DNA from: Macrostomum lignano | Lineage: Eukaryota | Assembly (NCBI GenBank): GCA_002269645.1 | Contig: NIVC01000225.1 | Location: 288,416-352,415 of the forward strand | Direction: 5' to 3' | DNA length: 64,000 nt | Shown: piece after piece, positions 36,499 through 57,645 of the stretch | Layout: each line of letters opens with the position of its first letter | Numbering within the stretch: the stretch's first letter is position 1 | Made by a program: the position numbers and the translations under genes | The notes under the pieces: generated by a model | The model's input: only the letters and a program-made list of their open reading frames with translations | The model's database searches: none | Told to the model about the DNA's origin: nothing

Positions 36499-38793
36499 AG
36501 CCGAGGTACCGAAATTTAGGACTGAAACTTACATGTTCGCAGGCAAAAATATTTTCCATTGCTGTTGTCACTAAAAATAAATTATAAAGCCCTCTTATCC
36601 CTCTTATAGTCCATGCGTGCGGTAAATTCCAATCGATCTATGTCTATGGCTAAAACCAGAAGAATGCTTTGCCCATAAATCTACCATTTAAGCACTAAAA
36701 ACCAAGTATTGAATCCTATAATTCACAGTTAAAATCCTAAAGTTACATAAAGATAGGTTGGGCCATAGACAGCACCGTGAATTTCTGACTGACACCGTCA
36801 AGCGTGACAGTTTTTTCATTTCAAATTTCAATCATTTCTTTTCTTGTCATTTCATTAAGATTAATTTTCATTTTAATCTTTTAAGCCGCTCTTAATGCTT
36901 AGGAAAGTTATAAATTAACTGTGACTGGTGATCCTGTTTGTGAATTTATTAAGCAAATTTTTGTACCCGAAAATTACATGTATATAGGCCTATTATACAG
37001 GCACACAAATGGCTACTGCTGCGGTCACAGACTCAACCGCAAGCTCTTTCCCTCTCAGCATCAGCAGCTGCTGTCTCCACTCCTGGTAAACTCCTTCATC
37101 AAGCCAATGTAGGACCAGGCGAAAGTGGCTGACGGAAAGTATGAACAAAACAAAAATGATACAGTCATAACTATAGGAAAAAAACTGAAAAGTTAAAATT
37201 TAACTACGGTACAGTGCGTTGAAGCAATTCTAACCAAAAATAAAGTAGCTGGAAAATTTCTAAAACTAAGTCAAGAAAAACATAAATTTTGCTTTACTCT
37301 GTGCAGAAACAACTGGTGCGTGTATTTGGTTGCATCCAAAAACATGGTTTGAGAGCTCGCAAAACAAACTCGCGTGTTGTGATTCTGATAAGTGCCTGGT
37401 GCACTAATCTGCAGTTAGTTATTGCAGTTAAATTCACTGCTCTATCTTTGGAGCTAAAAATAAAAAAGAGATATTGATTAATAAAATTGAATCTGAATTT
37501 CAAAATCAACAAGACAAGTCTGAATTAAAAATGTGAAACGCAAAATGAACGCACGAAGCTGCGTGATTGGGCATTGAGGAATGTGTAAGGAACTCAGGTT
37601 GATCGTCTTTCATACGCTGCAAAACAATTTTTTAATTTGTAAGAAATAGATTATTGTAGCTATTTTAACTCAGGGAGTCAGAAGTCTTTCATATTATGAG
37701 CACTGCGATTCCTGAGCCACAAAAAAATACTTTCTAAGCATACTAGCTATATTTAGATTTTTTCTAAAATATTTGAGATCTATGGAAAGTAAAGGTACAT
37801 CATAAACCCGAAAAATCATAACTCCGAAAGGATTTCCTATCATAACCCCGAAAACAAAAATAGCGTTGGACATTGCTAGCACTTTTGAAGTTATGCTAAT
37901 TCGGGTTTATGGTGGAAAGCGCTTTCGGAAGATGTTTATGATGGCCCCGGCACCTTTTAGTGAGAGAGTTCGGCGCAGATTATACCGCTTAATCACGAAG
38001 AACCAGCTTAATCGTATTTTATAAGGTGAGGAATTACGGGTAATATGTTTTGTTTATTTCGTCAGATTAAAAAAAGCATTTTATTAAGTTTGATTGGTGA
38101 TAATATAATCATAGGCTGAATACAAAGTGGTTAGGACATTTTTCTCTTTGAATAGACTTGTTGAAGCTTTTTCAAAATTGCAGGAATCATTCGAGCAACC
38201 GTACTGACAAGGTACAACCCACTTCGAGTGGGATATGGTTAATTTTTTGTTATAATTTAAACAAGGATAAAAGTGTAGGATTTGGCAAAGGTGAGTTTTA
38301 ATTGTTTGTCGTTGGATAGTAGACTAGCGATATACAGTACAGGGACAATGAGTGCATGCAGAAGTTGCTTACTGCTCCAAATAACAATGTTTACACAGTA
38401 AATGCTATATCGATCTAATCTATCTTCAGGAAATTATACCAGAAAGGAGAGTAAGTCATAAACTGAATTTCAATAACACAAAAAGGAATAGAATTTGGAC
38501 TATATTACTACACAATCTCTTGTAACAATCAAGAACATTCTACTATTTCTACTGGGGAGAGATCTCTATATGTACCTCGATCTTTATCAATGAAAATAGT
38601 AGACTATCTTTTTCTACTGAAAACCAATGAAGGATATTAAGAGATTAAATCAATTTGATCAAGGAATAGTTGGGATAGAATACTCATAAGTTATGGTTAA
38701 ATTTTATACAGTTGAGGCATAACACAACGGAATAAAAACATAATTTGAGCAATAAATATTAAATTAACTTGGCCAAGAAGAAATTTATATATA

Positions 38794-41700
38794 TTAGGAA
38801 TTACCCTTTCTAGCAGAGCTCAGGTCATTGTCTAGAATGATCTCCAACATCTCCCTGTAGCATGCAAATCGCCGCAAAAAATGCATTGTAAATCTGTTCT
38901 GATTAATGTTGAACTACATGCTGGGGGTGCTTCCCGTTATATCATGTACTTTGGGTTGTTTAGAAATTGAGCTGAGATGACATTGTAGCGGTTTTAGTCA
39001 ATTAGTTTTCGGTTGTTCATTGATTCATTAATAGATACCATTGGTGTAAAAATAATTAGTATGGAGAAAAATTATAATGGTCGCACTTTAATAATTAGTG
39101 GGAAAAAGGATGCAAGCTGAAGTTAACAAAATGCACAGATGTCGATGTCAAAGCGAACAATCATAGAATAACTTCTAAACATCCAGCTAGACATCAAAAA
39201 GCTGGATTTTGTCGTAAGCTCTCAATTACAGCAGCATTCGTAATTCACTAAACTCACAGAATATACACAGAATGCTCAATCACGCATTTTGAGAAAATTT
39301 CTTTCTAATTAGAAATTAAATTCTATACTACTGGTAGCTACTCTTGTTGTGAAGAAAAACTAAGTAGGCCGAATGGCACTTTTCCATGTTTGTCCAACCC
39401 AGACGGACCATAGATGTATTTTAGCAGAGCATATCACTGAGTAGACTGGGAAGGGTATGCGTATGAGTATGAGTCTCATAATTGTGTTGTTGAAGTGCAG
39501 AGGCAGCTTCAATGACAGACGGGAGTGCCGAGAGGCCGTGACGAATCTTGCCTGTCAACCAGTTGTTGGGCTGTCAATTGCAGACCAACAGCAACTGCGA
39601 GAACGATGACAGCACTTTGCTGCGCGAATTTCGGGTCCAGGTAGCAGCCAACTGCAATTGCGCATAGTCCTGGGTTGCAGGGCGATGATCTGATTTCAGC
39701 GAACCCATTGCATCAACTGAGGAGGATAACAACCTGCTTGTCGGTACCTTCGGCATCATTGATAGCGAGAAGTGCGTCTACATTGGGGGCTGGCTGCTTT
39801 TCAAGCTCTTCAAATATGAGTGCAAGTGCGACGAATGCCAGCAGACGTTGAAAGTCGATGGTTCGAAAGCGACGCGCTTTCTGCAGCTCAAAAATAGACA
39901 GGATGGAACTGGAAACCTGGTCATCTCCAAAAGGGCAGTTGATCATATCTGCAGTCTGTCAGATGGAGCGCACCTTCACGACAACAGACAAAGAGTTGTG
40001 TGTTCTGAAGGGTGTGGGTCAACGGCTGCAAGAAAAGTTCTTTCCTATTGTTCTTGCTAACATTCACACACACAGCTCGGATCACAGTGAACGCTGCGCA
40101 AGGGCGGTGGCCAAGTTGTTTGCCCGAATTCGCCTGCATTGCTGGTGAAACAGTCAGAGGGAGCTCGCTCAGTAGAGAAAGCAGCGCGAGGGCGCACGAC
40201 AGGAATGAAGAGAAGTGAAGAGTAGAAGAAACTGATGCGAATGAATGCTGTTTGACTTGATTTTTTAAGATTCAATTTTTGACTTCCTAAATAAACTGAC
40301 CGGTTTTTAAATTTGATCCTTGTAGTAGGATCGTTACTGCTTTTGATACTTTTTGCTAAATTATTCTTTGCTAGTTTATACTACTGGCCATAGACTTCAC
40401 CACAAAAGTAGTACGCATGAACTTTAATTCGGCTTCATGGAAAATGCTTGATTGAGCATTCTGTGTATATTCTGTTTACTAAACTTCTAAACTTGACCAA
40501 AGCAGCCATATCTCATGAGATTTTTTTGACATAAATTGTTGATTATTCTGAATCTATTGTTTGCTTGTTAACTACTCGTTTGTTAATTTTAATTACAATA
40601 TAGTATGGATAACGAAATATTTATTAGTTATATGAATTCGTACATTTAGAGTCCCATGGTGAACATTTAGTATAAATATGGCATAAACAGCATCCATTTA
40701 AACTTACGGGTCGTACTACGAGAAAGAAGTAAAATAAAACTGCTTCACGGCATGGCAACTCGTAGCGAAATAATTTCGTATTTTAGTGAATATAAATAAA
40801 TAAGCAATTAACAGTCACAAATACAGGCTGAACGTCACGCATAAAAAGGAAGAGTAAACGTTTCAGTTCAAACAAATGTTGACAAATTTCACTGCATTTT
40901 AGTCTGACGTGTTTTACCTTCTGAGTTCCCATGCGATCAAAAAATATCTTGAAAACATCCTGTTTTTTGTACGACGCGGAGTACAGTTTGTTTCTTGTTA
41001 AAGCTTACTATAACAAAGAGGTTCTATTTTTAATATGCTCTTAAAATATTAAATGAGGTTACCCCTCATTACCCCGATCAGTTACCCCGATTACATTGAC
41101 ATTATTCAAAAGGGGATCGAACTTTAGAGGATAACAAATAGTACATATAAATTCTATTCCTTACCTGTAGTTAATCTCCCCATCTCCGTCTTTGTCCAAA
41201 TCGTTGATCAACCATTCGACCTCTTCGTCCGTGAGGTTAAGCCCGGATTCCTGAACGGTTTGAGTGGGTTTTGACAGTTTATTTAAGTGCAAGTCAATTG
41301 TAATTACTATTGACGTTATTAGAACTGATGCAAGTTCTGCCCCTTTCTGGAACAGGCAAAAATGTCAATTAGGTTTTAAGGCACTTCAGAAAAATGAGAA
41401 AGATAACTCGATTAAGCTTTCCCACGGAGAAATGTGTTCTTCCTTCAAACAGGTGCCGTAATAGATAGAATATTCAATTTCAATATGTGACAGACGCATT
41501 CCATCTCGCTTGTACAAATGACTTCAGAAAAAGAGGAAGCACTTTCTGTGTGGCGTGTCAGGGCGTGGGAAATGCGAAATTACATACATTTATGCTAATA
41601 TAATTCGAGCGAAATGCCACACAGCACAGCAAACCGCACAACTTAAAACAAAACTTGGTGCATATGTTATTGTCGAACAGGTAAAAATTAGCCAAAAAGG

Positions 41701-44700
41701 ATTTGTTAACTATTGTCGGCACTCGCGTCGTGTCAGTTGGCAGAGGTAAATAGGAATGATAAAAGATTACAGAAAATGTTGAGACAAATCTGGTGTGTTT
41801 TACCTTTCGGAAAATCTGAAATTGTATGCGTTGTTTGATAAAGTGTACGACTAGAATTGTCTTAAATGTTTCGCCACCCCTACCTTTTTGTAATTTTGTT
41901 TTGTAAAAACATATCAATCAACCTCGATCAAATTCAATTACTCTGGAGTGTTCATACTTGCACAGTCGTAGCGTGTGACTATAGTGTAGTACGCTTAATC
42001 TCACTGTCCTACCATCTCACTCCCACTGAATCTAAAATGTACACTGGGCAACCACCTCACTCCCACGGAATATAAAATGTACACTGAGCCAATCACCTCG
42101 CTCCCACTGAATCTACACTGGGCCAACCACCTCACTCCCACAGAATCTAAAATGTACACTGGGCCAACCACCTCACTCCCACAGAATCTAAAATGGACAC
42201 TGGGCCAACCACCTCACTGCCACTGAATCTAAAATGTACACTGGGCCAACCACCTCACTTCCACTGAATCTAAAATGTACACTGGGCCAACCACCTCACT
42301 TCCACTGAATCTAAAATGTACACTGGGCCAACCACCTCACTTCCACAGAATCTAAAATGGACACTGTGCCAACCACCTCACTGCCACTGAATCTAAAATG
42401 GACACTGTGCCAACCACCTCACTGCCACTGAATCTAAAATGGACACTGGGCCAACCACCTCACTGCCACTGAATCTAAAATGGACACTGGGCCAACCACC
42501 TCACTGCCACTGAATCTAAAATGGACGCTGGGCCAACCACCTCACTCCCACTGAATCTAAAATGTACACTGGGCCAACCACCTCACTGCCACTGAATCTA
42601 AAATGGACACTGGGCCAACCACCTCACTGCCACTGAATCTGCAATGAACATTTGGTCAAGCACCTTTCTCCCGCTGAATCTAAAATTTACACTGAAACAA
42701 GCAACTCATCCCCACTCAACCATTTCCTTGAATGTACGCTGGGCTTGAACTGCGCAATTTACAAACTAAGCCAACCTCCAAAATTTTAATAAAATCCACT
42801 TTTAGGTGGATGTAAATAAAAAAAGTGATTTTCTAAGACAGCCTAAAACTTACCTCGAGTCCTTCCAGAAACTCTTCTCGCGTCACCGACATGCTTCGAT
42901 CTTTGTCAAAGGTGTTAAAAAAATCGATCATCTTCATACCGCGTTTCTCAACAAAGTTTCTCAGCTTCATCATTGGATGCACTTTGGCCTTCTCGCGATG
43001 CGGCACCTTGACACCGACTTCCACCTTAAGCTCAGGCATTGTCTCCAGGAGTTGATAGTGCAGATCCTTGAAGTCGTCGTTAACCATGATGTCCTGCATT
43101 ATATTGTTTTCATTAATCATCTTTATTTAACATGAAGCATACCAAGAACTATAGATAAAAAAGCTCGTATAATTTTAGACTACTTTTAGTAAGAGGACGC
43201 AAGCTCAGACCCGAACGTCTCAGACTCGAACCTACATGTATGAATTTAATACGGTCGTACCTATTAGTTATGGTGCAGCTAAGCATTCGTGTCTCGCTCA
43301 AAAAGTTAAAGCGAAATTGGATTTATCTTCGTCGTATTTAATTGCTACGAAGTTCCGAAAAAATACGGAATGTGCCGACGGTATAAAAAGAATAAACCTT
43401 CGTTTCAAAGGGGGTTTTGAGACCACTGGATCAAAGCCTTCGGCGACATCGTCCCACTACCAGAGGCTATAATCTAGCCATTTCGATTACTTCTGAGCAC
43501 ATTCATACAGCTTGGTATTGTACGCAGACACGCGCTCGCACAGGGCTTAAAGTGCACTTATTTTATAATCACTATGTTATAGGAAGTCATATAAATAACA
43601 GTAATAATAATTGGCTACAACTGCCCCAATTGAGCCAGATGTGCAACCGACAGCTCAGCCGCAGCTATTGCGCGGCGCATCTGAAGGCTGAGTACGGCTG
43701 TTCAGTCCAAGGACTGGGGGGTCGCCACACACACCCTCAATTACCCCAGCTAATGCTGGCACCCATTTTACAGCTGGGTGAACTGAAGCAATGCAGAGTT
43801 GTGTCTTGCTCAAGGACACAAGGACACACCCCGACCTTCAAGTCGTGAGCGCGACGCTCTAACCACTAGGCTTCAACCTCCGAGGAAGTCAGCATGTAAA
43901 CTCTCTGCGCCACCAGGGTTTGCCTTCATGGATGTGAATTGCATGACGGCATAAAAGACAATTCACCGGCACATTTACTTACGCAAGCCCCGATTCGAAT
44001 TGACGTGGCTGAGCACAGATTTCATATCTCGGACACTTCATATCTCGGACACTCAATGTCTCGGAAATTTCATATCTAGGACACTTAATATCTCGGACAC
44101 TTAATATCTCGGACACTTAATATCTCGGACACTTAATATCTCGGACACTTAATATCTCGGACACTTAATATCTCGGACACTTAATATCTCGGACACTTAA
44201 TATCTCGGACACTTAATATCTCGGACACTTAATATCTCGGACACTTAATATCTCGGACACTTAATATCTCGGACACTTAATATCTCGGACACTTAATATC
44301 TCGGACACTTAATATCTCGGACATTTCATATCTCGGACACTTCATAACTCGGACACTTCATATCTCCGAAATTTCATATTCATTTGTATAGAATGCAGGT
44401 GATACCGCAAATTGTTCAGAAATCGCATGTGACTCTAATTGCACAGACTGTTTGCCCCAATTTAGCTGGCATCGCCAAAATATGTTTAAAACGTTTTTTA
44501 ACCTAATTGTTACGAAGGAATACCGCAGTACAAGACAGCAAGCTTAGCTTGGATTTGTGAAGGTTGAAACAGTAGTTCTCTAAATACGAGCGTACCACCC
44601 CTATAGCTACTCAGCAGTATGCTTCTCTCTTTTAATGGCCCGCCTCTCAATTGATATTCTCTCTTCTCAACAGCCGACTGTGAATAGCCACTCGTGCGAG

Positions 44701-44937
44701 CTTCTCTCCAAGTTGCAGCATAATTCAAACTATGAAGACTCGTTTCTCAGTTGACTGGTTGCAACGATTCAACACAGCAGTTGCTGGCTACGTACTACAG
44801 GCATTGGGTTGAATAGATTCTTGAGACAGCCACCCGGGGCAACAAAAGCAACCATGCATATGGCGCTCTAAAAAGAATTCTACTGAGTAACAGAAGAAGT
44901 GGCAGCCTGAGAGATGAAGAATCACAATAAGACAGAG

Positions 44938-44993
<56 letters not shown>

Positions 44994-47900
44994 CCGGTGC
45001 AGATTTTACAATGCACCTGAAGCACGAAAGCATTCTCTCAACAAATTGCACAGTCGAGCAGCGATAGAGAATGGGTTTTAGACACAATAGATTTGTCTAA
45101 AGCTCGAAAAAAATGGTAGCTTTTATCTGCCTGATTTTTCGCCAGTCGAGAAGGGACCGCGAGTTGGGGAGGGGTTAAAAGGGCTGCTTTAGCTACTCAG
45201 CATGCGTTCGTGCCGCCGACACGTGGGGAAGCCTATTCTTATAGAGTTGAATAGCCCGCTCTCGGAGTGTCTGAGCCACAGAGCCAGAGACAGAGGGCAG
45301 AGTGAGCAAGCCATCTTTTATAAAGAGTCGCATTTCTAACAGAAGCGGTACAGAGCAAAGCTGCTACCGCAATTTAGAAGATGGATCGCTCGAAGCGATC
45401 AGCCCAGGAGGCCGGACGGCGTGGTCGGGTTATCCTGACCAGCGACCCGCTGCTGCGGGCCTTCTATGAGAACAATGTGGAGCGCATGGGCGCCATCATT
45501 CGCGAGGACCCAGCCGAGCTAGAACGCTTGCTAGACCAGGTGCATCCGTTGGCCTGTCTGGCAGCTAAGGAAGACCGAGATGATGTGCTGGGGCTGGTGA
45601 ACTCACTCGGTGGTAGGCTCGATCTGCGCAATGCCGAACAGATGACGCCGTTGCATTTGGCTGTGATGCACGGCTGTTTGAAGGCTACTAATTTTCTCAC
45701 CTACCTAAAGAGTAGCGACCTGAACGAGCCGTATCCGAATGGTGACTACCTACTGCACAGGGCCTGCGTCACTGGTCAGCCTGAGCTGGTGCTGCAGCTC
45801 ATGCGAGTTGGCGCCGATCCCAATAAGACAAATGCTCAGGGCCTGTTGCCGCTGCACAAAGCCTGCGAGGAGGAAAGCGTCGCCATGGCAGCCGCTTTGC
45901 TGCCTAAGACCGAGAACGTGAACGTGGCCGGGCAGCAGGGTCGAACTGCGCTGCATATTGCGGCTGCCAACCAGTCGCTTGCCCTCATCAAGCTGCTGCT
46001 GGCCTACAATGCCGACATTGACAAATACGACCGCAACAAGGAGTCGCCAATGGACATCATCATCCAAATGGGCAACAAGAACATCCTGGTTGGTCTTGCC
46101 AACTTCCTTGATCGTTCAGTCACGGGAAGCTTCCTCTCGTTCAAAGAGCTGGACGATAACGCCGAGTTTTCAAGTGTCCTTCGCTTCATCGAAGCCATAG
46201 ACAACGAAATCACGCATCCGACAGCGGCTAAGAAGTTGGAGGTGCCCGAAGAAGAGGCCTCAAGAATTATCGGCCGAATCGCGACCGAGGAGAAGACGGA
46301 TTTTATGGAGTTTCGCTCAATGCTCAAGACAATCGCCTATGGTGGTCTCTCGCAGAGGATTATTGATCACAAGATTGTTGACAAACTTGCCGTTGCCGTC
46401 TGCAAGCAAGTCCTATTTCGTGAGGATGCCGAAATGCTGCGATTAATTGTCTACAACACCGGATTGTGGCCCGCCATCCGCTCCGCTCTGGAAGAGGATG
46501 TGTTCATACTGTATGAGACCTGCCAAGAAATCGGCTCGACCGGCATGGTTGGCCTCATTAAGCACGAAACCTTCGACACGGAGGACGAGATGAACATTGA
46601 AGATTTCTGTCGCTTTGTCGCTCAGGTATCCAATCTGCCGGCGTTGGACATGAGCAGAGAAAAGGAACGGGACGAGTTTCTAAAGGACCCGCTGCAGTCA
46701 CTGACTCTCTGGTCGATTCTGACTGGCCGCTTTGATCTTACAGAAGATCTGCTGAAAACCGAACAATTCGACATTATCCCAATGGGCTTAATGTGTGCGG
46801 GCATTCTGCGCAACATCCGCTTCCGACCGGAGATTCCGTCGCCAACAAAGAAAATCATGGAAAACGTTGCTGACAAATGCGAGAGCGTTGCTGTGAAACT
46901 ACTGCGAAGCATCACCGAGTACGACACATCCGATAACAAAGTGGTCAGCATCCAGTACATGCGCTGCCCGTTGCATCCCTACAGCAACAAATCTGCTATT
47001 GATCTGGCTGCATCTGGTCAATCGGAATCGTTCATCACTATGCCGAGTGTACAAAGCGCCCTCGACATGGAGTGGTACGACCGCCTGTACAAGCTGCCCT
47101 GGCTGCTGCGCCAGTTTCTTGTGCTGATGGCCCTCATTCCCTACAACCCAATTGTGGCGTTCATTCTCATCCGGCTAGAGAAGAAGAAGGCAGAGGAGCG
47201 CCGGTCTAAAGCCGCCACCGAAGAGGAGGAAGAAGATAAAGAAGTGAATTTGCTAATATTTATAATGCTTGTGAAGTTCCTGATCTATTTAACGCGTATT
47301 TTTCGATATTTTCCACGAAATTACGGCGCGTAATTCATTTTCTTTCCAGGTAATCGGCGTTACCCTGGGTTCTGAAGCGCGCAAGCGCAATACAAAGGAC
47401 AAAAAGGACGAGGATAGAGTCGGTGCAACCGACCGGCGCAAGAAGATGCGCCGTCACCTAACTATGCAGCAGTCGGAGGAGGCCCTGACAGATGACAAGC
47501 CTGACCAACAGCAGGCGGACATGGAGTTGGCGCGTATGGACTCACGCTCCACGCTACTCTCCACGGACAGAAAGAGCCGTGGTAGACCCGGACGCTCCGA
47601 CGAAGAGCCAACAAAGGCCGAGAACATTTTTAAGCAGTCTTTTGACGCTATGAACAAACTGTACAACACGCCGTGCGTTAAGTTCCGCTTTCACGTCATG
47701 TCTCACATCATCTTCGTCCTTATCTTCTCAATTGTGATGGTCGCCCAGTTTCGCTACCATCCAACGCCGCTAGAGATAATCGTTTATCTGTTTCTGTGCG
47801 GCTTTCTGTTAGAAGAGTTGCGCGAAGCTAACATGGCTTTAAACTCGGGAACAATGTCGGAATACATATCGGACGGTTGGAACATCATCGATAACACAGC

Positions 47901-50900
47901 CATCCTATTGGGCCTTGCTGGATTTGTGCTACGTTTGTTCCGTATCAACACAAAGATGACGACAAGTGATCTTTACACTTTCACTGACAGCTTCTGGTGG
48001 TGCGCTCACCTCACTTTGGCTCTCAGCTGCCTGCTGTTCTGGATTCGATTGCTCTACATCAGTACGGTGCTTGAGAGCCTGGGCCCGAAGCTGAAGATGA
48101 TCTATATCATGATCATACGCGATTTCCTACCGTTTCTCATCATCTTGTCCATCGTGATGTTCGGCTTCGGCATAGCTATTCACGGCCTACTGTTCCCTAA
48201 CGGCTACGCCAAAGACAACAAGGTTCCATTGAGCGGCGCCGAGATCTTCCAGCGGATGTTCAAGATCACCTTCTACGCCATGGTTGGTGACTACTCGCTG
48301 GATCTGATCCAAGGCAGCGATTGCAACAATGAGACAACTACTAAACCGTGCCCCCATCCGCTCGGAAAGATTGTGGTGCTCAACATGATCATGGTGATTT
48401 ACATCGTTATCACTAGCGTCCTGCTGCTAAACCTCATCATCTCGCTGTTCAGCAAAACAGTCGAAGAGGTCGACAGTAAATCGTTCGCCCTGTGGCAGTT
48501 CGAGCGTTACAACTTGGTGCACGAGTTCCACATCCGGTTTCCGCTGCCACCGCCGTTGAACATCCTTGGAAGCGTCTTCAAACGAATCAGCGGTATTTTC
48601 CTGCGGTTCAAAGCCCGCGGCAGGCAGGACAGCCAGAAGTTGACTCGCGGCTTCGAGAAGGCCTCCGTGTTCCACTTCCTGCTCTATCAGGCGTTTAGTC
48701 TCCGTAGGAAGCGCAAATACCTTGAGGGCGACGTGGAGATCGAAGACATTGACAAGATCATCGGCGAGATCAACACCAACGTGAAGCTGATGAACACCGA
48801 GATCGGCAACCTCACCAGGAAGGTGGCCGAGCAGCGAGATGAGTGCGAAGAAGATGAAGATTGATTGGCTGTTTCGAATCAAACTGAGGACCATAATAAT
48901 GGATTATTCAGATTTTGATGTTTCAGTAGCTACAGTTAAAACTCTCACATCAGAAAAAAGTCGCAAAACTTATATTCGATTTTTTACTTTGTAATAATTT
49001 TTCGCAAACTTTTACTATACTCATTTTGTTTAGTTTATATTAACAACTCGTATAGTTAATTAAACTGACTCGTACTTGTACGCCACGTCGTAGCCCTTTT
49101 GCTGTTGAACTCTGCATATTCATGAGATGATATTTTTAGACGTAATTATTTAAACAAAATTCCACAATTGCATCATCCTGTTTTAAGCTGAAATTGGCCA
49201 ATAAATTAAGCTCATTAGAAGCTATGGAATTAGTAGGATCGCAGCGTTTGTACATGAATTACTAATTTTTGACAACAATTTAATAATATCGTACGAGCGT
49301 AATTCACTTGCTCACCTGAAAGTCTAGCAGACAGATCTGAGACTGTGGATTCTTGGAAACGGCAGTTAGAATTGCATAACAACCGGAAGTTTGCATCGGA
49401 TTTCGGCCCATCTGACGAAAAGTGATATCGGTTTTGTCAATGCTAGATTAATTTTTTTATTTTCCTTACATTTTTACCAAAATCTTTACAAATTGTCACT
49501 CTGTTTGCACTCTGTCACTCCTCAACCTACTCAATTCTCTGTCTGTCACTCATCAAACTGCTCACATCTCTGTCTGTCACTCACTAACCTGCTCACATCT
49601 CTGTCTGTCACTCACCAACCTGCTCACATCTCTGTCTGTCACTCACCAACCTGCTCACATCTCTGTCTGTCACTCACTAACATGCTCACATCTCTGTCTG
49701 TCACTCACTAACCTGCTCACATCTCTGTCTGTCACTCACTAACATGCTCACATCTCTGTCTGTCACTCACCAACCTGCTCACATCTCTGTCTGTCACTCA
49801 CTAACATGCTCACATCTCTGTCTGTCACTCACCAACCTGCTCACATCTCTGTCTGTCACTCACTAACATGCTCACATCTGTCTGTCACTCTCCAACCTGC
49901 TCACATCTCTGTCTGTCACTCACTAACATGCTCACATCTCTGTCTGTCACTCACCAACCTGCTCACAACTCTGTCTGTCACTCATCAAACTGCTTAAAAC
50001 TATCACTTCAAATACGAGTTTGCCACCCAGAACTCACCCGCAGAACCTTGAGCGTACTATTTAATGTAAGTCCCTTTCCAAACAGTACGGCGCCTTCAGT
50101 AGTGATTCGATTGTTCCTGAAAGCAAATCAAATGTTTGAACTAGCTGACTAGATCTAACAACTTCTTGATGGAGTTCATGCACAATATATTGCATTCAAC
50201 AAACATTTTCTGTGCAGAAATCAAGATTATTTTGTTCAACAAATAAAAAACTAGACAAAACAATTTAGCTCATACTTTAACTAAATTCAACGATCTCATA
50301 TGCCTACTGAGAGTAGAAAAGTAAGTAAAATTATATGTATTATGCTTGTACACGCGTGTACAAGATTCATTTTGGGAGGCCGTCCGAGCAACTGAGGATC
50401 TAGGAGGCTGGCTGCCCAGCAACTGAGGATCTGGGAGGCTGGCTGCCCAGCAACTGAGGATCTGGGAGGCTGGCCCAGCAACTGAGGATCTGGGAGGCTG
50501 GCTGCCCAGCAACTGAGGATCTGGGAGGCTGACCCAGCAACTGAGGATCTGGGAGGCTGGCCCAGCAACTGACACTCTGGGAGGCTGGCCCAGCAACTGA
50601 GGATCTGGGAGGCTGACCCAGCAACTGAGGATCTGGGAGGCTGGCCCAGCAACTGAGGATCTGGGAGGCTGACCCAGCAACTGAGGATCTGGGAGGCTGG
50701 CCCAGCAACTGACACTCTGGGAGGCTGGCCCAGCAACTGACACTCTGGGAGGCTGGCCGAGCAACTGACACTCTGGGAGGCTGGCCCAGCAACTGACACT
50801 CTTGGAGGCTGGCCCAGCAACTGACACTCTGGGAGGCTGGCCCAGCAACTGACACTCTGGGAGGCTGGCCCAGCAACTGACACTCTGGGAGGCTGGCCGA

Positions 50901-53900
50901 GCAACTGACACTCTGGGAGGCTGGCCCAGCAACTGACACTCTGGGAGGCTGGCCCAGCAACTGACACTCTGGGAGGCTGCCCAGCAACTGACACTCTGGG
51001 AGGCTGGCCCAGCAACTGAGGATCCGGAAGGCTGGCCTAGCAACTGAGGATCTTGGAGGCTGGCTCAGCAACTGAGGATTCCGGAGGCTGGCCAGGCAAC
51101 TGACAACAATTGAGGATCTGGAAGGAACTCAAACTAAGTCTGGTAGAAAGCACTCACGACAGGTTGAGCTCCTCCAGACAGGTATTGACTTTGATGGCTT
51201 TGCTAAGCTCCTGAAGGCCGTAGGTGGGTCCGAAGCCGTTGAAACTCAGGTCCAGCCCTTTCAGCCCGTTGTTTGCCTGAACAGTAGGAAGTTGTTCAAG
51301 TTAATTACACTCATCACAATGAAACATGAAGTTTGCTATTTGCCCCTCGCTACTCAACACTTAATTAGTAGTTGATGCCAAGCCAACTCACCGCAAGCCC
51401 TTCGGCGATGCCCTTGGCGCCTTTGGCTCGGATGTGATTCCAGCTGAGATTGAGCTCGAGCAGGCTGCTGTTCTCCATCAGAGCTTTGCCGATGGTGAAG
51501 CCGCCCAACTCGGCGAAGTTGTTCTGCGACAGATCCAGCCGGTGCAGAGTGGCCGTGTTCTGCCGGAGTGGGCCGCGTTTGGGATTCGGGCATATTTTGC
51601 GATTTAGGATCTTCGGGTTTGGGATTCAATGATGACGTGGGATTTGAGAGGGGTTTGGGATTTGGAATTCGGGAAGGGATTAGGACTTGGGATTTGTGGA
51701 GGGGTTCGGATTTGAGATTTGGGAAGGGTTCGGGATTTGGGGAGGGTTTGGGATTTGAGAAGATTTTGGGATTTGAGGAGGGTTTCAGATTCGAGAAAGG
51801 TCTGGGATGTCAAGAGGGCTTGGGATTTAAGTAGGGTTTGATATTTGGGAAGGTTTTGAGATTTGGGAAGCGTTTGGGATTTGGGAAGCGTTTGGGATTT
51901 GGGAAGCGTTTGGGATTTGGAAGGATTTGAGATTCAGGAAGAGTTTGGGATTCAATGATAATTTGGGGTTTGGGATTTGGGAAGGATTTGGGATTCAGGA
52001 AGAGTTTGGGATTTGGAAGGATTTGGGATTCAGGAAGAGTTTGGGATTTGGAAGGATTTGGGATTCAGGAAGAGTTTGGGATTTGGGAGGATTTGGGATT
52101 CAGGAAGAGTTTGGGATTTGGGAAGGATTTGGGATTTGGAAGGATTTGGGATTCAGGAAGAGTTTGGGATTTGGAAGGATTTGGGATTTGGAAGGATTTG
52201 GGATTCAGGAAGAGTTTGGGATTTGGGAAGGATTTGGGATTTGGAAGGATTTGGGATTCAGGAAGAGTTTGGGATTTGGAAGGATTTGGGATTCAGGAAG
52301 AGTTTGGGATTCAGGAAGAGTTTGGGATTCAGGAAGAGTTTGGGATTTGGAAGGATTTGGGATTCAGGAAGAGTTTGGGATTTAAAAGGATTTGGGATTC
52401 AGGAAGAGTTTAGGATTCAGGAAGAGTTTGGGATTTGGAAGGATTTGGGATTCAGGAAGAGTTTGGGATTTGGAAGGATTTGGGATTCAGGAAGAGTTTG
52501 GGATTCAGGAAGAGTTTGGGATTTGGAAGGATTTGGGATTCAGGAAGAGTTTGGGATTCAATGATGATTTGGGGTTTGGGATTTGGGAAGGGTACCCGAA
52601 GAAAGTATCAGAAGGAGTGCAGATTTTATTGGCTTGAATCTTAAAGAATCTTAATAGGATTGAGATCGGAATGAATGATAACTAGGGATATTCAAGGATT
52701 GGGAATTTAGAAGCTATCAGCCATCCCAAGCCTCTCACGGTGATCAGATCCGCAAAGAACTGGCTGCTCCTGTCGTCAAATTCGTTGCCGCGCAGGCAGA
52801 CGCTGGTCACCTGCGTGTTGGCCATAAGAACCTCGCACAGCTGCTTGGCAACATCCAGGCCCATTTTATTATCAGCCAGATTTAGCTCAGTGATGAAGCA
52901 GTTCTCGCGCAGCATGTGCACCACCTGCAGGCCACCGGCCGCTCCAAGCCAGTTATCGCCGAGGTCCAGTTTAGTCACGGTGGAGTTCGAGGCCAGCGAA
53001 GCGCACAGCGGCTTGATGCCGCCGGTGCCCAGGCCGTGGTGCCGCATGTCGAGCTCCGAGTCGGCGATGTGGCGCAGATAGTAGCTGGCCGGGACCACGC
53101 CAGCCGATTTGCACAGGTCGATGTACAGAGTGCGGCCTGAGTGGTCGTAGGCCGCGTGCTCGGCTGTGGATTACGATTTAAGGTTAGGGAGTTCCTGAGA
53201 TAAAGAGGATTTGTGTAAGAAAGACAGAGAGGAGAATGACAAGGAGCGAGGGAGTAGTAGAATGAGTAGAGAGTGATCTCTTCATCCTTTTCTCACAAAG
53301 TTTATAGCGACAGCGACAGCAAAATCAACAGAACTGATTACACCCGCCCCAATTAGGCCACATCTGCAACCGACAGCTCAGCCGCAGCTATTGCGCGGCG
53401 CATCTGAAGGCTGCGTACGGCTGTTCAGTCCAAGAACTTGGGGGTCACCACACCCACCCTCAATTACCCCAGCTAATGCTGGTACCCATTTTACCTATGT
53501 TTCTTGCTCAAGGACACAAATTTTTCCACTGGGAATTGGGAATCGAACTCCCGACCTTTGAGTCCCGAGTTCGACGCTTTAACCACTGGGCTGCAACCCC
53601 AGCCTAACAACCACAGCCTAACAACCCCAGCCTAACAACCACAGCCTAACAACCCCAGCCTAACAACCACAGCCTGTCAACCAGCCGCTCTGAGCCAGAT
53701 CTGTAAAACTGGGAATTTTTTGCATTTTTCGCTCCTCATCGGTTGAGAAGTTTTTGTCTATCAGATACGGAAATTTCTAGAGATAAAGTGAAACACAGCC
53801 AAAGTTATAAGCAATCAAAGCCAAAGAGATCTTTCTGGATGACATGATTATAAGGAGAGAAGCCGAGAGAGGGTAGTGAGGAGAATGGAAGAGGTAAGAT

Positions 53901-54725: not shown

Positions 54726-57544
54726 ATTTATTTTTACTGAAAATTTATTTATAAAATTGTAAATTAAAACTCTGTTTTTTTCTGGTCTACAAATTTCTTA
54801 AATAGCTAGTATTTCATTAGCTATATATGGTTATATATATATATATATCAGTGGTAACATATAATACTGAAATTTGATCTCGTCATGCACTTCTCCATAT
54901 ACTAAATCCATTATACTAAAAATGGTCTTGTTTGATCTAAATTTTTAAGTGTATAAGACTACATGATAGATTGATAGGATTCTACCTTTATACCTTTGCA
55001 CTGTTCAAAATGCTTCAATTTTTATTATTTTCAATGAGTATTAGTTTTACATATAAAAAACCTAGCATATGACATATTAATGCAAAATTATCATTTTTGA
55101 AGTTATTTCAAAACTTCAAAAATTTAAATGGCAATGAGCCACATATCTACTCCTGGCAGTTCATTAAGTTTGGTTCAGAATAGTGCACATATGATCAAAT
55201 AATAGGTAGGAGTGGTCAAGAATTTAAAGACTAGAATAGCTAAAAAAATTATACCATAATTCCGAGTTAAACTTACTCTAAACGTTTCACAATGCCTGCT
55301 AACACTTAGAAATCGGAGAATACAAGCGATAATATATTTATATTAATGCATAAAGTACCGCATTCATTATAGCTTTTGTAAGCCAACATTAATTTTTGGC
55401 TGTAAAAGATCAAACTTTAGCTCAGTCAAATTAAGCTCAAAATAAAATAAATGCCACGGTATTATTTTATCAAATATATATTTGACTCTGACTCTTCGCG
55501 AAAAGAATGTTTCATTCTAAGTTAAACCACTACACTACTCAATAGAGTTTCTAGTTTCCAACAGATTTTACGAATAAAATTTAATTATATATTTAAACAA
55601 AAACATAATTACAAGGTTAATAAAATATCAAAAAAATTATTGCATAAGTCGAAGCAGTTCCTTTGTTAAAATGTGAACAATTCTCAACACCGTATCCGAT
55701 CAGCCCGGCCTGCGAAATACATTATAAGCCTGAGATACAGAAACAATTTTTTGTAATAGCACGTAAATTAAGTTATGCATTATATTGAGTAATATCGAGT
55801 TTATTGTTAATATTGAATTGCTAAATTTCAAACTAGCAATGCATACAATGAAAATTGTAAAAGCGCATAAAACTTTGTGGCATTTTTCCGCAAGATGTTC
55901 CGCAAAAAGTTCTGCAAAAGCTTTTTGTAATCTATCGATTTTCACTGAGCCTGGCTAATTACATTGACTGTACAATAATTTAAACAACCCGGTCATTCGT
56001 TTCTGTTAGCGTGTAGTATAAGAAAGATAGAAAGCGCTATACCTTAGCTGTGACGCTAAAGTGAAAGAAAGTCGGGCTGTTAGGCGTTTGGTGTGGCTCG
56101 GTGCGAGACTCTGGCCGCTTCAGAAAAGCTAGGCCAAGTGTCTCTTGAAGCAGATAGCCAGCTAGGACACTAACCGTATTTGACTTTTTTAATACTCAGT
56201 GCGAGTGAACTAGAAGGTGAGTACTACATTATGATGGGTTTCGACCTTCGGGCTCCTTGTTAGGGAAGCCTTCGGGCCTCAGGCTCAGAAATAAATCAAT
56301 TAGAGACCTGGCCCCCACTCCTGTCAGATGGTCAGCCCCATGGTAGCTTGATCGTGTGGCGAGCAGTCTAGGTCCTATAGCTAAGAGAGGGACAGCGAGA
56401 GACGAGCAGGGAGAATTTTGAAAGTAGAAATTAGCTAATCCGCAGATCAACTAACTTGCTGCCACCAGCCCGTGCGCCCTGGCTCACCACACCGGGACTC
56501 TCGAAATCGGGCTTCCGACTAGAAGGGGCTTTGCACTTACCTGCCAACTAGTGTCTTTTTGCTGTCAATCTCGAAGTCATAGCCGATGATAAGGGACACT
56601 GCTGGGACTAGATCGCGTTGGCCATGCAGGTACAGAGGGGACTTGTGCAGGGGATTCTTGCGGTGGCGAGTCTATGGGGTAGCTACATGTACTATTACAT
56701 TGCTAAATACGAAGATATGTACTTTTAGCCTTCAACGCGCCAACTAGCCTCTCATAGCGCTGATGATAGGCTAACTCGAACTTCAGAGACCGCATGATTC
56801 ATTTACCCGAGCCGCTTGGCTACCCTAGAGTGCACAAAGTACATCTCTGGCGCCGATTCTGCACTTTTGGCAGTTTTGCTCACTGATTGGTTAGATTGGT
56901 TGACTGAGAACTGCCTTGCCATTGGTCCACTGTGACCGACGCCTACTAGCTTAGCTACTCATCTGAGCCATCGGCGAACAAAGAAATAAAGCCGACAAAG
57001 ATAACTGTTAGATTTAACCTTCTCCTTAGTTCACTTCACACTTTAGATTGAATTGGAGTCTTAGACTACTAGCAGTATTATTGAATGATTCCTGCCTCAG
57101 CAACAGCACTACTGAACAAAATGAGCAAAAGTGTGCGCCTAATTCAGCTACTGCAACAGGGGACAGAAAAGGGATCACCCAATCAAGCAAGTCTAGGTAG
57201 CCTCTCACCCAACCAATCAGAAACTCAACAGCCGGAGACCAGGTATTCCACAGTGACCGAATCGGCTCGATGCTCTGCAGCTGTAGACTCGGGATGATGC
57301 TGTCACAATCTTCGCTGTTAGCTAGCAGGTGATGCTCTTAACTGGATGTTCGCTGCTGTCGACCGGGGGACTCGTCCTTGATGATGATGGGGGAAGTTGC
57401 AATCCGGGGATCAAGAAACGACGGTCGTGCTCCGGGAACCAGAAGTTGCGCGCTGGGCCCGAGCCAAAGTAAGAAGAAGTTGCGTCCGAGCGGGCCAAAA
57501 ACTCCGGTTTAAATAGCCGCCAACTGGACCGCAGTTTGTTATAA

Positions 57545-57645
57545 CGGAACGCGTCGATTCTGATTGGCTGAGCCGTTTTGTTAAAATGAGCGCCGAATTT
57601 TCTGATTGGCTAAGCTCGTTGCTACCCAGAATCACGTGACCGAGA
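57545..57645. promoter_or_regulatory. Promoter-like motif cluster
   Basis: Two ctgattggct (inverted CCAAT) motifs, gttgctac (half X-box-like) and tcacgtga (E-box) within 100 bp of CpG-rich sequence. Confidence 0.35.

What the first reader, a model, noticed from the sequence alone, without database searches (positions are those of the whole stretch)
45381..48864. TRP channel joining ankyrin repeats to a TRPM-type core
Seen: about 5-6 ankyrin repeats in the first ~230 aa, then a helical linker, then DPLQSLTLWSILTGRF...CESVAVKLL...SAIDLAA...FITMPSVQSALDMEWY, YNTPCVKF and the TRP box WQFERY..EF..RFPLPPP. Known: these motifs match the TRPM MHR4/pre-S1 and TRP-box pattern (LFLWAVL.NR; FY.AP.VKF; WKFQRY.LI.EY..RP.LPPP). 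Canonical TRPMs have SLOG/MHR1-2 at the N-terminus, whereas ankyrins typify TRPA/C/N/V. There is no NUDT9-H or kinase tail. A ~110-aa charged insert precedes S1. Inference: a domain-swapped or lineage-specific TRPM/TRPS-related channel whose gating may differ from known subfamilies.
Basis: partly seen in the sequence, partly recalled or inferred. Interest (0 to 1): 0.75.

Follow-up and report, generated by a model that had tools for sequence, protein, structure and literature searches.

The report
Flatworm ankyrin-headed TRPM-like channel gene
This is a real two-exon gene of the free-living flatworm Macrostomum lignano for a TRPM-type cation channel whose usual N-terminal SLOG domain is replaced by ankyrin repeats; that design is already described in parasitic flatworms as TRPM_MCLZ, the target of the anthelmintic meclonazepam, so this is a new member of a known kind.

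Summary
Window 45381-47243 plus 47350-48864 (+ strand, one 106-nt GT..AG intron) encodes a 1125-aa protein identical to Macrostomum lignano BOX15_Mlig012389g1. It has six ankyrin repeats, a helical linker and a region homologous to the end of MHR3 plus MHR4. A disordered charged insert of about 110 aa precedes a TRPM-type S1-S6 core, a TRP helix and C-terminal helices. There is no SLOG, NUDT9H or kinase domain.

The transmembrane core matches only TRPM structures strongly (about 80-117 bits, against 44.5 for NOMPC). The residues that align with the TRPM Ca2+ site in the voltage-sensor-like domain are kept.

The architecture is not new. It is that of TRPM_MCLZ (Smp_333650), the schistosome meclonazepam target, whose clade has been called 'TRPM-like'. 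In my trees the ankyrin-bearing sequences form one flatworm-only clade (bootstrap 97-100). A M. lignano-only expansion of 12 lineages, including this gene, is sister to the trematode/cestode sequences that I infer to be TRPM_MCLZ orthologues.

I found no description of the free-living-flatworm members or of this expansion. Where the clade sits relative to canonical TRPM and TRPS stays unresolved.

Verdict: correct reading, known kind, modest interest.

The parts
45381..47243 (+). Coding exon 1 (codons 1-621): ankyrin repeats, linker, MHR3-end/MHR4-like region, first pre-S1 helices, start of the charged insert
   Evidence: ORF. Splice donor GAA|GTGAAT read directly. Spliced product identical to P0001. 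tblastn shows 2 exons.
47244..47349 (+). Intron, 106 nt, GT..AG, phase 0, inside the charged pre-S1 insert
   Evidence: Sequence read. Frame check. The in-frame stop at 47331-47333 lies inside it.
47350..48864 (+). Coding exon 2 (codons 622-1125 plus stop): rest of the insert, the whole channel domain, TRP domain, C-terminal helices
45549..46118 (+). Ankyrin repeat domain, six repeats (residues 57-246), preceded by capping helices 23-52
   Evidence: Pfam Ank_2/Ank/Ank_3/Ank_4/Ank_5. Six helix pairs with pLDDT about 85-93 in the AF2 model.
46119..46385 (+). Helical linker (residues 247-335) with no detectable homology to MHR1/2 or the start of MHR3
   Evidence: No Pfam hit. Lies outside the hhalign match. 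Helical in AF2.
46386..47150 (+). Region homologous to the C-terminal part of MHR3 plus MHR4 and the first pre-S1 helices (residues 336-590)
   Evidence: hhalign of the Ank-family profile against a 57-sequence profile of the region between SLOG and S1 of canonical TRPMs: probability 99.9%, E=3.3e-33, fragment columns 105-359. Pfam PF25508, second half only.
47172..47610 (+). Charged, low-complexity insert of about 110 aa before S1 (residues 598-708), interrupted by the intron
   Evidence: pLDDT 25-33 and no secondary structure over 620-708. Length and sequence vary among family members.
47614..48450 (+). Pre-S1 helix and S1-S6 (residues 710-988). Contains the voltage-sensor-like domain with E777, E780, N799, D802 and R854; the pore helix; and the filter FYAMVGD (929-935).
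   Evidence: Pfam Ion_trans. PDB phmmer: all hits shown are TRPM channels, nvTRPM2 117 bits. Helices. Residue comparison.
48460..48555 (+). TRP helix (992-1016; WQFERY box at 1003-1008; E1013) and TRP box 2 PLPPP (1019-1023)
   Evidence: Aligned with WKFQRY..EYH..PP of nvTRPM2 and drTRPM2. W1003, E1013 and P1021-1023 are invariant or nearly so in the family.
48658..48849 (+). C-terminal helices (1058-1072 and 1085-1121), candidate rib and pole (coiled-coil) helices; no enzyme domain follows
   Evidence: AF2 secondary structure. No Pfam domain there. The roles are inferred by analogy with TRPM structures.

Best explanation
**What it is.** The locus is an intact, intron-poor gene of Macrostomum lignano. 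It encodes a subunit of a tetrameric, TRPM-type non-selective cation channel of the flatworm 'ankyrin-TRPM' clade. The characterised member of that clade is TRPM_MCLZ, the meclonazepam-activated channel of schistosomes.

**What is shown.**
- The SLOG/MHR1-2 module and the start of MHR3 of canonical TRPMs are absent. Six ankyrin repeats plus a helical linker of about 90 aa stand in their place.
- The end of MHR3, MHR4, the pre-S1 elements, S1-S6, the TRP helix and the C-terminal helices are TRPM-like.
- The gene belongs to a M. lignano-specific expansion. That expansion is sister to trematode and cestode sequences which I infer, from circumstantial evidence, to be TRPM_MCLZ orthologues.

**What is inferred.**
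- The channel is gated through the cavity of its voltage-sensor-like domain. H736, H740, E777, R854 and Y1008 correspond to the published meclonazepam-contact residues H827, H831, E868, R943 and Y1117.
- Gating also involves the TRPM-type intracellular Ca2+ site (E777, E780, N799, D802, E1013).
- The acidic filter (VGD) predicts a cation pore permeable to divalent ions.
- With no SLOG and no NUDT9H, it should not respond to ADP-ribose or nucleotides the way TRPM2 does.
- The ankyrin domain more probably serves as a protein-interaction or assembly platform.
- Y857 at the S4 position that sets drug sensitivity (H946 in S. mansoni, Y in S. japonicum) predicts low meclonazepam sensitivity.
- The most economical history is one replacement of the SLOG head by ankyrin repeats in an early flatworm, followed by duplication in the Macrostomum lineage.
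For: **Gene model.**

**Domains.**

**TM core.**
- The best 60 of 98 PDB sequences at E<=1e-10 are all TRPM (nvTRPM2 117 bits, TRPM2/5/3/1/8/4/7 at 80-112 bits).
- The NOMPC TM domain scores only 44.5 bits.
- Foldseek against the PDB returns TRPM2/3/4/5/8 at every one of the 50 listed ranks except rank 2, which is NOMPC.

**Same architecture elsewhere.**
- At least 10 M. lignano paralogue clusters.
- Also Opisthorchis, Dicrocoelium, Fasciolopsis and Schistocephalus.

**Trees.**
- S1-TRP region, 147 sequences: Ank clade bootstrap 97; M. lignano subclade 72, or 100 without the basal P0145; parasite subclade 98.
- Longer MHR4+TM alignment, 101 sequences, two distance methods: 100, 100 and 99-100.

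**Link to TRPM_MCLZ.**
- The parasite members show H-H-Y-E-R-x at spacings 4, 33, 4, 75, 3. These equal the published H827/H831/Y864/E868/R943/H946 (PMC10788528).
- P0137 is 1378 aa, against 1380 aa for Sm.TRPM_MCLZ (PMC11731825).
- Opisthorchis P0131 carries two channel domains, as published for exon 3a/3b (PMC12861061).
- The Fasciolopsis and Schistocephalus members are auto-named 'TRPM7', the former label of TRPM_MCLZ.

**Clade signatures shared with the query.** The S1 H..H pair and the pore Tyr are rare in canonical TRPMs.

**Intron-poor like TRPM_MCLZ.** This gene has 2 exons. A canonical SLOG-NUDT9 TRPM of the same genome has at least 21 exons over 35 kb. In S. mansoni the figures are 3 against 36 (PMC11731825).
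Against: - No sequence of Smp_333650, or of the accessions cited in the papers, was on hand. The identification of the parasite subclade as TRPM_MCLZ rests on residue fingerprint, length, exon duplication and naming, not on direct identity.
- My trees are distance-based (Scoredist or Poisson-gamma NJ), not ML. The node joining the Ank clade to canonical TRPMs is unresolved (bootstrap 21-39; with flatworm TRPMs 17-39), and no TRPS reference was identified.
- A secondary swap rather than an ancestral ankyrin head is therefore parsimony, not proof.
- Function, ion selectivity, Ca2+ dependence and drug response are all inferred from conserved residues.
- No expression data were examined.
- Pfam's MHR match is only just above threshold (28.3 against 27).
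Confidence: 0.85

Rival explanations
1. The ankyrin-TRPM clade is not a TRPM that swapped its head. It is an old, separate TRP lineage, sister to TRPM+TRPS or branching before SLOG was acquired, that keeps the ancestral ankyrin repeats of TRP channels and survives only in flatworms.
For: - The backbone position of the clade is unresolved in my trees. It sits outside all 119 SLOG-type TRPMs with bootstrap of only 21-39, and it does not join the flatworm TRPMs (17-39).
- PMC12861061 places TRPM_MCLZ 'next to' the TRPMs, not within them.
- Himmel 2020 (PMC7306681) infers that ankyrin repeats were lost before the TRPM-TRPS split, so an ankyrin-bearing sister lineage is conceivable.
Against: - Every member of known origin is a flatworm. 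SLOG-TRPMs already exist in choanoflagellates (P0179, Salpingoeca).
- An ancient origin would therefore need loss in nearly every other animal phylum.
- The clade shares the MHR3-end/MHR4 module (E=3.3e-33) and the Ca2+ site with TRPMs.
- Its best-scoring canonical relatives are flatworm TRPMs (258-264 bits, against 227 or less for most other canonical TRPMs).
Confidence: 0.1
2. It is an ordinary ankyrin-bearing TRP channel (TRPN, TRPA, TRPC or TRPV type) whose TRPM-like motifs are convergent.
For: The N-terminal ankyrin repeats resemble those of NOMPC and ankyrins. NOMPC ranks second in the Foldseek list.
Against: - The TM core scores 80-117 bits to TRPMs and 44.5 bits to NOMPC. No TRPA, TRPC or TRPV chain appears among the 60 best PDB hits to the TM core.
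- The MHR3/4 homology is specific to TRPMs.
- The Ca2+-site residues and the S4 Arg are present here and in TRPMs but absent from the TRPN sequences.
- The TRPM group separates from TRPN with bootstrap 100.
Confidence: 0.01
3. The combination is an artefact: a chimeric gene model or assembly join, or a decaying pseudogene or retrocopy with no function.
For: - The gene is nested in an intron of an opposite-strand gene and is flanked by minisatellites and a reverse-transcriptase fragment.
- It is intron-poor.
- Some M. lignano family models are clearly fused with transposon ORFs (P0285, P0286).
Against: - Ankyrin repeats, linker and MHR4 lie in one uninterrupted 650-codon ORF, so the junction does not depend on a gene model.
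- Both exons are open over 1125 codons with a canonical intron.
- All family-invariant residues are intact.
- The same architecture recurs in more than 10 paralogues and in four other flatworm genera.
Confidence: 0.03

Closest known systems
TRPM_MCLZ (Smp_333650) of Schistosoma mansoni and its orthologues in trematodes, cestodes and monogeneans (the 'TRPM-like' clade)
   Same: - N-terminal ankyrin repeats instead of MHR1/2-SLOG, a TRPM-type TM core and TRP helix, and a short C-terminus without an enzyme domain.
- Few exons, with the channel domain in the last exon.
- Conserved pocket residues of the voltage-sensor-like domain: H..H in S1, E in S2, R in S4, Y in the TRP helix; also the pore Tyr.
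- Same clade in my trees (bootstrap 97-100).
   Different: - About 22-23% identical over the full length, and shorter (1125 against 1380 aa).
- A member of a M. lignano-only expansion of 12 lineages, so a co-orthologue rather than a 1:1 orthologue.
- Keeps the canonical TRPM filter Gly plus an acidic residue (VGD), which the parasite proteins have lost.
- S2 has Phe for Tyr864. The Ca2+-site position has Glu where the parasites and most TRPMs have Gln.
- The intron is not at the position of the parasite exon 2/3 boundary.
- Comes from a free-living host. Drug sensitivity is unknown.
Canonical TRPM channels (closest solved: Nematostella TRPM2 6co7; zebrafish TRPM2; TRPM5, TRPM3, TRPM8, TRPM4)
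   Same: - The end of MHR3 plus MHR4, the pre-S1 motif FY.xP.VKF and S1-S6.
- The Ca2+ site of the voltage-sensor-like domain (E, Q/E, N, D plus the TRP-helix E) and the S4 Arg.
- The TRP box W.F.RY and PPP, and C-terminal helices.
   Different: - No SLOG/MHR1-2 and no start of MHR3. No NUDT9H or kinase.
- Six canonical ankyrin repeats at the N-terminus.
- S1 H..H instead of N..Y, and a pore-helix Tyr instead of Phe, Trp or Leu.
- Two exons, against at least 21 for a canonical TRPM in the same genome.
TRPS (TRP soromelastatin, ced-11 type)
   Same: A relative of TRPM with a related TM core, absent from vertebrates.
   Different: TRPS proteins are reported to carry SLOG and Nudix domains and no ankyrin repeats (PMC7306681). 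This protein has neither SLOG nor Nudix. Its placement relative to TRPS was not tested here.
TRPN/NOMPC, TRPA1 and other ankyrin-bearing TRPs
   Same: An N-terminal ankyrin repeat domain in front of a 6-TM TRP channel.
   Different: - Only six repeats here (NOMPC is known to have 29; that number is from my own knowledge).
- The TM core is only distantly similar (44.5 bits).
- There is an MHR3/4 module between the ankyrin repeats and the channel.
- TRPM-type Ca2+-site residues are present here and absent from TRPN.

Membership tests
TRPM (canonical melastatin family) | TRPM-type S1-S6 core with TRP box | tested here: met
   PDB phmmer with the TM region: the 60 hits shown are all TRPM, at 80-117 bits. 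The region groups with the TRPMs against TRPN at bootstrap 100.
TRPM (canonical melastatin family) | N-terminal MHR1/2 (SLOG / LSDAT) domain | tested here: not met
   No PF18139 or PF18171 hit at E<=1. No match to the SLOG regions of P0123 and P0124. Ankyrin repeats occupy the N-terminus.
TRPM (canonical melastatin family) | MHR3 and MHR4 | tested here: inconclusive
   The second half of PF25508 is matched at 28.3 bits. hhalign gives E=3.3e-33 over residues 336-590, equal to the end of MHR3 plus MHR4. The first roughly 90 residues after SLOG in canonical TRPMs have no counterpart here.
TRPM (canonical melastatin family) | Ca2+ site of the voltage-sensor-like domain (S2 E and Q, S3 N and D, TRP-helix E), as in TRPM2/4/5/8 | tested here: met
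   E777, E780 (Glu for Gln), N799, D802 and E1013 align with these positions. Their role in Ca2+ binding is taken from established TRPM structures.
TRPM (canonical melastatin family) | C-terminal tetramerising coiled coil | tested here: inconclusive
   A long helix at 1085-1121 in the AF2 monomer. No Pfam TRPM_tetra hit. No tetramer was modelled.
Flatworm ankyrin-TRPM / TRPM_MCLZ clade ('TRPM-like') | Ankyrin repeats replace SLOG in front of a TRPM-like core; no enzyme tail | tested here: met
   Published description in PMC11731825 section 3.1 and PMC12861061 Fig. 1 legend.
Flatworm ankyrin-TRPM / TRPM_MCLZ clade ('TRPM-like') | Groups with the parasite sequences in a tree | tested here: met
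   Ank clade bootstrap 97 and 100. That the parasite members are TRPM_MCLZ orthologues is itself inferred from residue fingerprint, length and the duplicated channel exon.
Flatworm ankyrin-TRPM / TRPM_MCLZ clade ('TRPM-like') | Conserved pocket residues H831, R943 and Y1117 (also H827 and E868) | tested here: met
   H740, R854, Y1008, H736 and E777. Y864 is Phe773 here.
Flatworm ankyrin-TRPM / TRPM_MCLZ clade ('TRPM-like') | One-to-one orthology with Smp_333650 | tested here: not met
   The query lies in a M. lignano-only expansion of 12 lineages that is sister to the parasite subclade. It is a co-orthologue.
Flatworm ankyrin-TRPM / TRPM_MCLZ clade ('TRPM-like') | Direct sequence comparison with Smp_333650 or the cited accessions CAH8481013.1 and CAH8438365.1 | not testable with these tools
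   The sequences were not retrievable. The supplements are not held, and the third homology search returned only two hits.
Flatworm ankyrin-TRPM / TRPM_MCLZ clade ('TRPM-like') | Activation by meclonazepam or clonazepam | not testable with these tools
   This needs heterologous expression. Tyr at the S4 position that sets sensitivity (Y857) matches the low-sensitivity S. japonicum type (PMC10788528).
TRPS | SLOG plus Nudix domains; placement with ced-11 | tested here: not met
   No SLOG or Nudix hit. Tree placement relative to TRPS was not tested, because no TRPS reference was identified.
TRPN / TRPA / TRPC / TRPV | TM core of that family | tested here: not met
   The NOMPC TM domain scores 44.5 bits against 117 for TRPM. 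No TRPA, TRPC or TRPV chain is among the 60 best PDB hits to the TM core. The TRPN sequences lack the Ca2+-site and S4 Arg residues.

The most novel reading that the evidence does not exclude
The flatworm ankyrin-TRPM clade is an ancient, separate TRP family, sister to TRPM+TRPS, that preserves the pre-SLOG ankyrin-headed ancestor. Its radiation into 12 lineages in free-living Macrostomum would then be a lineage-specific sensory receptor repertoire, of which parasites kept a single, druggable copy.
Probability: 0.1. Interest if true: 0.7.

Novelty: new member of a known kind. Interest (0 to 1): 0.35.

Why it matters
TRPM_MCLZ is one of two validated TRPM drug targets in schistosomes. Its natural stimulus and physiological role are unknown, and the published surveys cover only parasitic flatworms: 63 orthologues from trematodes, monogeneans and cestodes (PMC12861061).

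This gene and its paralogues show that the ankyrin-headed TRPM design predates parasitism and is strongly expanded in Macrostomum lignano. M. lignano is a free-living laboratory flatworm; that gene knock-down and transgenesis are available for it is from my own knowledge. It therefore offers a harmless model for asking three questions:
- What these channels sense.
- What the ankyrin head does in place of SLOG.
- How the pocket of the voltage-sensor-like domain diversified.

The finding also corrects a general statement in TRPM/TRPS evolution papers that sampled no flatworms, namely that the family is ankyrin-free (PMC7306681; PMC13143021 also sampled no flatworms).

For the scan itself the result is mainly that a correct observation turns out to be a known kind.

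Tried and rejected
1. **First homology search, full-length protein.** It was swamped by generic ankyrin proteins and was useful only for the exact match and one paralogue.
2. **Second homology search, non-ankyrin part.** The word index found only 6 hits. The exhaustive representative search was needed to see the family.
3. **Third homology search, an 8-sequence profile (A1).** It returned only 2 proteins, so no named Schistosoma orthologue or TRPS/TRPC reference was obtained.
4. **Supplements of the two TRPM_MCLZ papers.** None are held, so there was no direct comparison with Smp_333650.
5. **P0140 (S. rodhaini, 1488 aa).** I first suspected it was TRPM_MCLZ and rejected that. It has a strong full MHR4 match, no ankyrin repeats, and sits in the canonical flatworm TRPM clade.
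6. **Conserved intron position with the parasite exon 2/3 boundary.** Rejected. The duplicated Opisthorchis exon begins about 95 residues earlier, inside MHR4. Paralogue P0122 also has an intron in the pre-S1 insert, but homology of position cannot be established in that unalignable loop.
7. **Origin of the Logan transcript P0136 (DRR639838).** A paper search for the run accession found nothing relevant.
8. **Tree software.** No ML program was available, so I wrote Scoredist and Poisson-gamma NJ with bootstrap. The backbone stayed unresolved.
9. **Regex fingerprint.** It found nothing and was replaced by alignment-based numbering.

Full report

The interval holds two long + strand ORFs: 45381-47333 (650 aa) and 47446-48864 (472 aa). 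Reading the junction shows a donor GAA|GTGAAT after codon 621 (exon end 47243) and an acceptor TTTCCAG|GTA (exon start 47350). The intron is 106 nt and phase 0. The stop that ends the first ORF lies inside it.

The spliced product is 1125 aa. It is 100% identical, end to end, to a deposited protein: hypothetical protein BOX15_Mlig012389g1 of the free-living flatworm Macrostomum lignano (P0001; contig NIVC01001595.1). tblastn confirms two exons.

Pfam finds:
- Ankyrin families over about residues 60-235.
- The second half of PF25508 'TRPM2-like domain' at 419-552 (28.3 bits, cut-off 27).
- Ion_trans at 739-998.
- No SLOG/LSDAT, NUDT9 or kinase domain.

An AlphaFold2 model built on a 21-sequence family alignment (mean pLDDT 74.5, pTM 0.68) shows:
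- Six ankyrin helix pairs (57-246), then a helical region up to about 620.
- An unstructured stretch at 620-708 (pLDDT 25-33).
- Pre-S1, S1-S6, a pore helix, a TRP helix (992-1016) and two C-terminal helices (1058-1072, 1085-1121).

**2. What is the core?**

With the TM region alone as the query, 98 distinct PDB sequences match at E<=1e-10, and all 60 shown are TRPM channels. Scores are nvTRPM2 117 bits, zebrafish TRPM2 112, TRPM5 108, TRPM3 106, TRPM1 102, TRPM8 100, TRPM4 96 and TRPM7 80. The TM domain of NOMPC reached only 44.5 bits. Foldseek of the model against the PDB lists TRPM2/3/4/5/8 chains at every one of its 50 ranks except rank 2, which is NOMPC, drawn in by the ankyrin repeats.

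I compared a profile of the region between the ankyrin repeats and S1 with a 57-sequence profile of the region between SLOG and S1 of canonical TRPMs. The result was probability 99.9% and E=3.3e-33 over residues 336-590. The end of MHR3 and all of MHR4 are thus retained. Residues 247-335 have no counterpart.

Residues that align with the Ca2+-coordinating positions of TRPM2/4/5/8 are kept: E777, E780, N799, D802 and E1013. So are the S4 arginine (R854) and the TRP-box W1003. The TRPN sequences lack these. That these positions bind Ca2+ comes from established knowledge of TRPM structures, not from this work.

**3. Is the architecture unique?**

No. An exhaustive HMMER search with the non-ankyrin part found 1674 relatives. 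The top tier all carries N-terminal ankyrin repeats, the second half of PF25508 or its alignable equivalent, and Ion_trans, and never SLOG. These proteins come from:
- Many M. lignano loci (P0126-P0130, P0132-P0134, P0002, P0122, P0145).
- The liver flukes Opisthorchis viverrini and O. felineus (P0131, P0290).
- Dicrocoelium dendriticum (P0137) and Fasciolopsis buski (P0317).
- The tapeworm Schistocephalus solidus (P0138).
- A few unnamed transcript or metagenome contigs.

SLOG-bearing canonical TRPMs begin below them.

**4. Literature.**

- Park et al. (PMC10788528) identified Sm.TRPM_MCLZ (Smp_333650) as the schistosome channel activated by meclonazepam. It has three exons and a long N-terminus with ankyrin-like repeats.
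- The review PMC11731825 (section 3.1) states that it lacks MHR1/2-SLOG, has ankyrin modules instead, is 1380 aa long and has no enzyme domain.
- PMC12861061 places it in a clade next to the TRPMs and suggests the name 'TRPM-like'. It surveys 63 orthologues from trematodes, monogeneans and cestodes, and reports a duplicated last exon (3a/3b, encoding the whole channel domain) in Opisthorchis, Clonorchis and Paragonimus.
- None of these papers mentions free-living flatworms in connection with TRPM_MCLZ.
- The two large TRPM/TRPS phylogenies sampled no Platyhelminthes, and Himmel 2020 calls the TRPM-TRPS ancestor ankyrin-free (PMC7306681; PMC13143021).

**5. Linking the window gene to that family.**

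I could not obtain Smp_333650 itself, so the link rests on four independent lines.

(a) Trees.
- S1-TRP region, 147 sequences non-redundant at 85%, 300 columns, Scoredist-NJ, 100 bootstraps, rooted on TRPN. All ankyrin-bearing sequences form one clade (97). It splits into a parasite subclade (98) and a M. lignano-only subclade (72; 100 without the basal P0145). The query is sister to P0294 (100).
- A longer alignment adding MHR4 (101 sequences, 578 columns, two distance methods) gives 100, 100 and 99-100.

(b) Fingerprint. At the columns of the published contact residues H827, H831, Y864, E868, R943 and H946, the parasite members read H-H-Y-E-R-(Y/F/N). Their spacings are 4, 33, 4, 75, 3, exactly those of Sm.TRPM_MCLZ. 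The query reads H736, H740, F773, E777, R854, Y857 and then Y1008 for Y1117. The S1 His pair and the pore Tyr are common in the clade and rare in canonical TRPMs.

(c) Opisthorchis P0131 contains two channel domains, 43% identical to each other. This matches the published exon 3a/3b duplication.

(d) P0137 is 1378 aa, and the Fasciolopsis and Schistocephalus proteins are auto-annotated 'TRPM7', the former label of TRPM_MCLZ.

Gene structure agrees too. This gene has 2 exons and paralogue P0122 about 5. A canonical SLOG-NUDT9 TRPM of the same genome has at least 21 exons over 35 kb. In S. mansoni the figures are 3 against 36.

**6. What remains open.**

The position of the ankyrin clade relative to canonical TRPMs is unresolved. 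The bootstrap is 21-39 for the next nodes. A sister relation to the flatworm SLOG-TRPM clade gets only 17-39, although those proteins score best against the clade's profile (258-264 bits). No TRPS, TRPC, TRPA or TRPV reference was in the tree.

I therefore regard one replacement of the SLOG head by ankyrin repeats in an early flatworm as the most economical history. The clade is flatworm-only as far as seen, and SLOG-TRPMs already occur in choanoflagellates (P0179). An older, separate origin is not excluded (about 10%). The intron-poor structure would fit an origin by retroposition of a 5'-truncated TRPM transcript next to ankyrin-coding sequence. That is speculation.

**7. How it most likely works (inferred).**

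- Four subunits form a cation channel.
- The filter FYAMVGD keeps the canonical TRPM Gly plus an acidic residue. The parasite proteins have lost the Gly. This predicts permeability to divalent ions.
- Gating probably runs through the cavity of the voltage-sensor-like domain, with its Ca2+ site and the TRP helix, as in TRPM2/4/5/8 and as for meclonazepam at TRPM_MCLZ.
- Without SLOG and NUDT9H there is no site for ADP-ribose-type ligands.
- The ankyrin ring is more likely a docking or assembly surface.
- Tyr857 corresponds to the S4 residue whose His/Tyr identity sets meclonazepam sensitivity in schistosomes. It predicts low sensitivity.
- The charged insert is a disordered loop of variable length across the family.

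**8. Verdict.**

The gene is a new, free-living-flatworm member of a known kind. I found no description of the Macrostomum expansion or of the implication that the design predates parasitism. Nothing in this work called for a referred step.

Noticed in passing
window about 35381-53831, minus strand (L001 1-18451): The NCBI annotation has a large opposite-strand gene (506-aa product with LRR and EF-hand hits) whose span encloses the TRP gene, so the channel gene is nested in one of its introns. The ORF at 42833-43120 (-) reads like an EF-hand exon.
   Followed up: partly
window about 57206-57701, + strand (L001 21826-22321): A small gene with a Caveolin (PF01146) product lies downstream of the channel gene.
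   Followed up: no
window 13868-14440 (+) and 29144-29854 (+): One ORF has a TLDc domain (E=2.3e-22). Another has a reverse-transcriptase RVT_1 fragment (E=6e-10) in a GC-rich patch, which is probably a retroelement remnant.
   Followed up: no
window 42011-42694, 44024-44366, 44941-44992, 49511-49994, 50373-51103, 51708-52579: Minisatellite and microsatellite arrays flank the gene on both sides: units of 41/123, 16, 2 (AG x26), 31, 28 and 18/35/53 bp. The long ORFs listed there on both strands are repeat artefacts.
   Followed up: partly
P0172 (Clonorchis sinensis) and P0308 (Opisthorchis viverrini), residues about 63-140: A canonical liver-fluke TRPM with SLOG, full MHR3/4 and Ion_trans also shows an Ank_2 match (33-37 bits, above the cut-off) upstream of SLOG. 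It is either a fused gene model or an ankyrin+SLOG intermediate that bears on how the ankyrin head arose.
   Followed up: partly
L004 (M. lignano NIVC01000082.1), intron after P0122 residue 654: Paralogue P0122 also has an intron inside the variable pre-S1 insert, about 35 residues before FYGTPCVKF. The window gene's intron lies about 105 residues before YNTPCVKF. Shared ancestry of the two introns cannot be judged in this unalignable loop.
   Followed up: partly
L003 (ENA metagenome assembly ERZ8811445, NODE_2627): A genomic contig from a metagenome carries ankyrin ORFs followed directly by a 755-aa channel ORF (P0146) that groups with Schistocephalus. This looks like tapeworm DNA in an environmental or host sample.
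   Followed up: no
P0285, P0286 and P0288 (M. lignano UniRef models of 2489-3003 aa): Some family members are annotated as giant proteins fused to integrase or other ORFs. These are probably gene-model fusions with neighbouring transposons.
   Followed up: no
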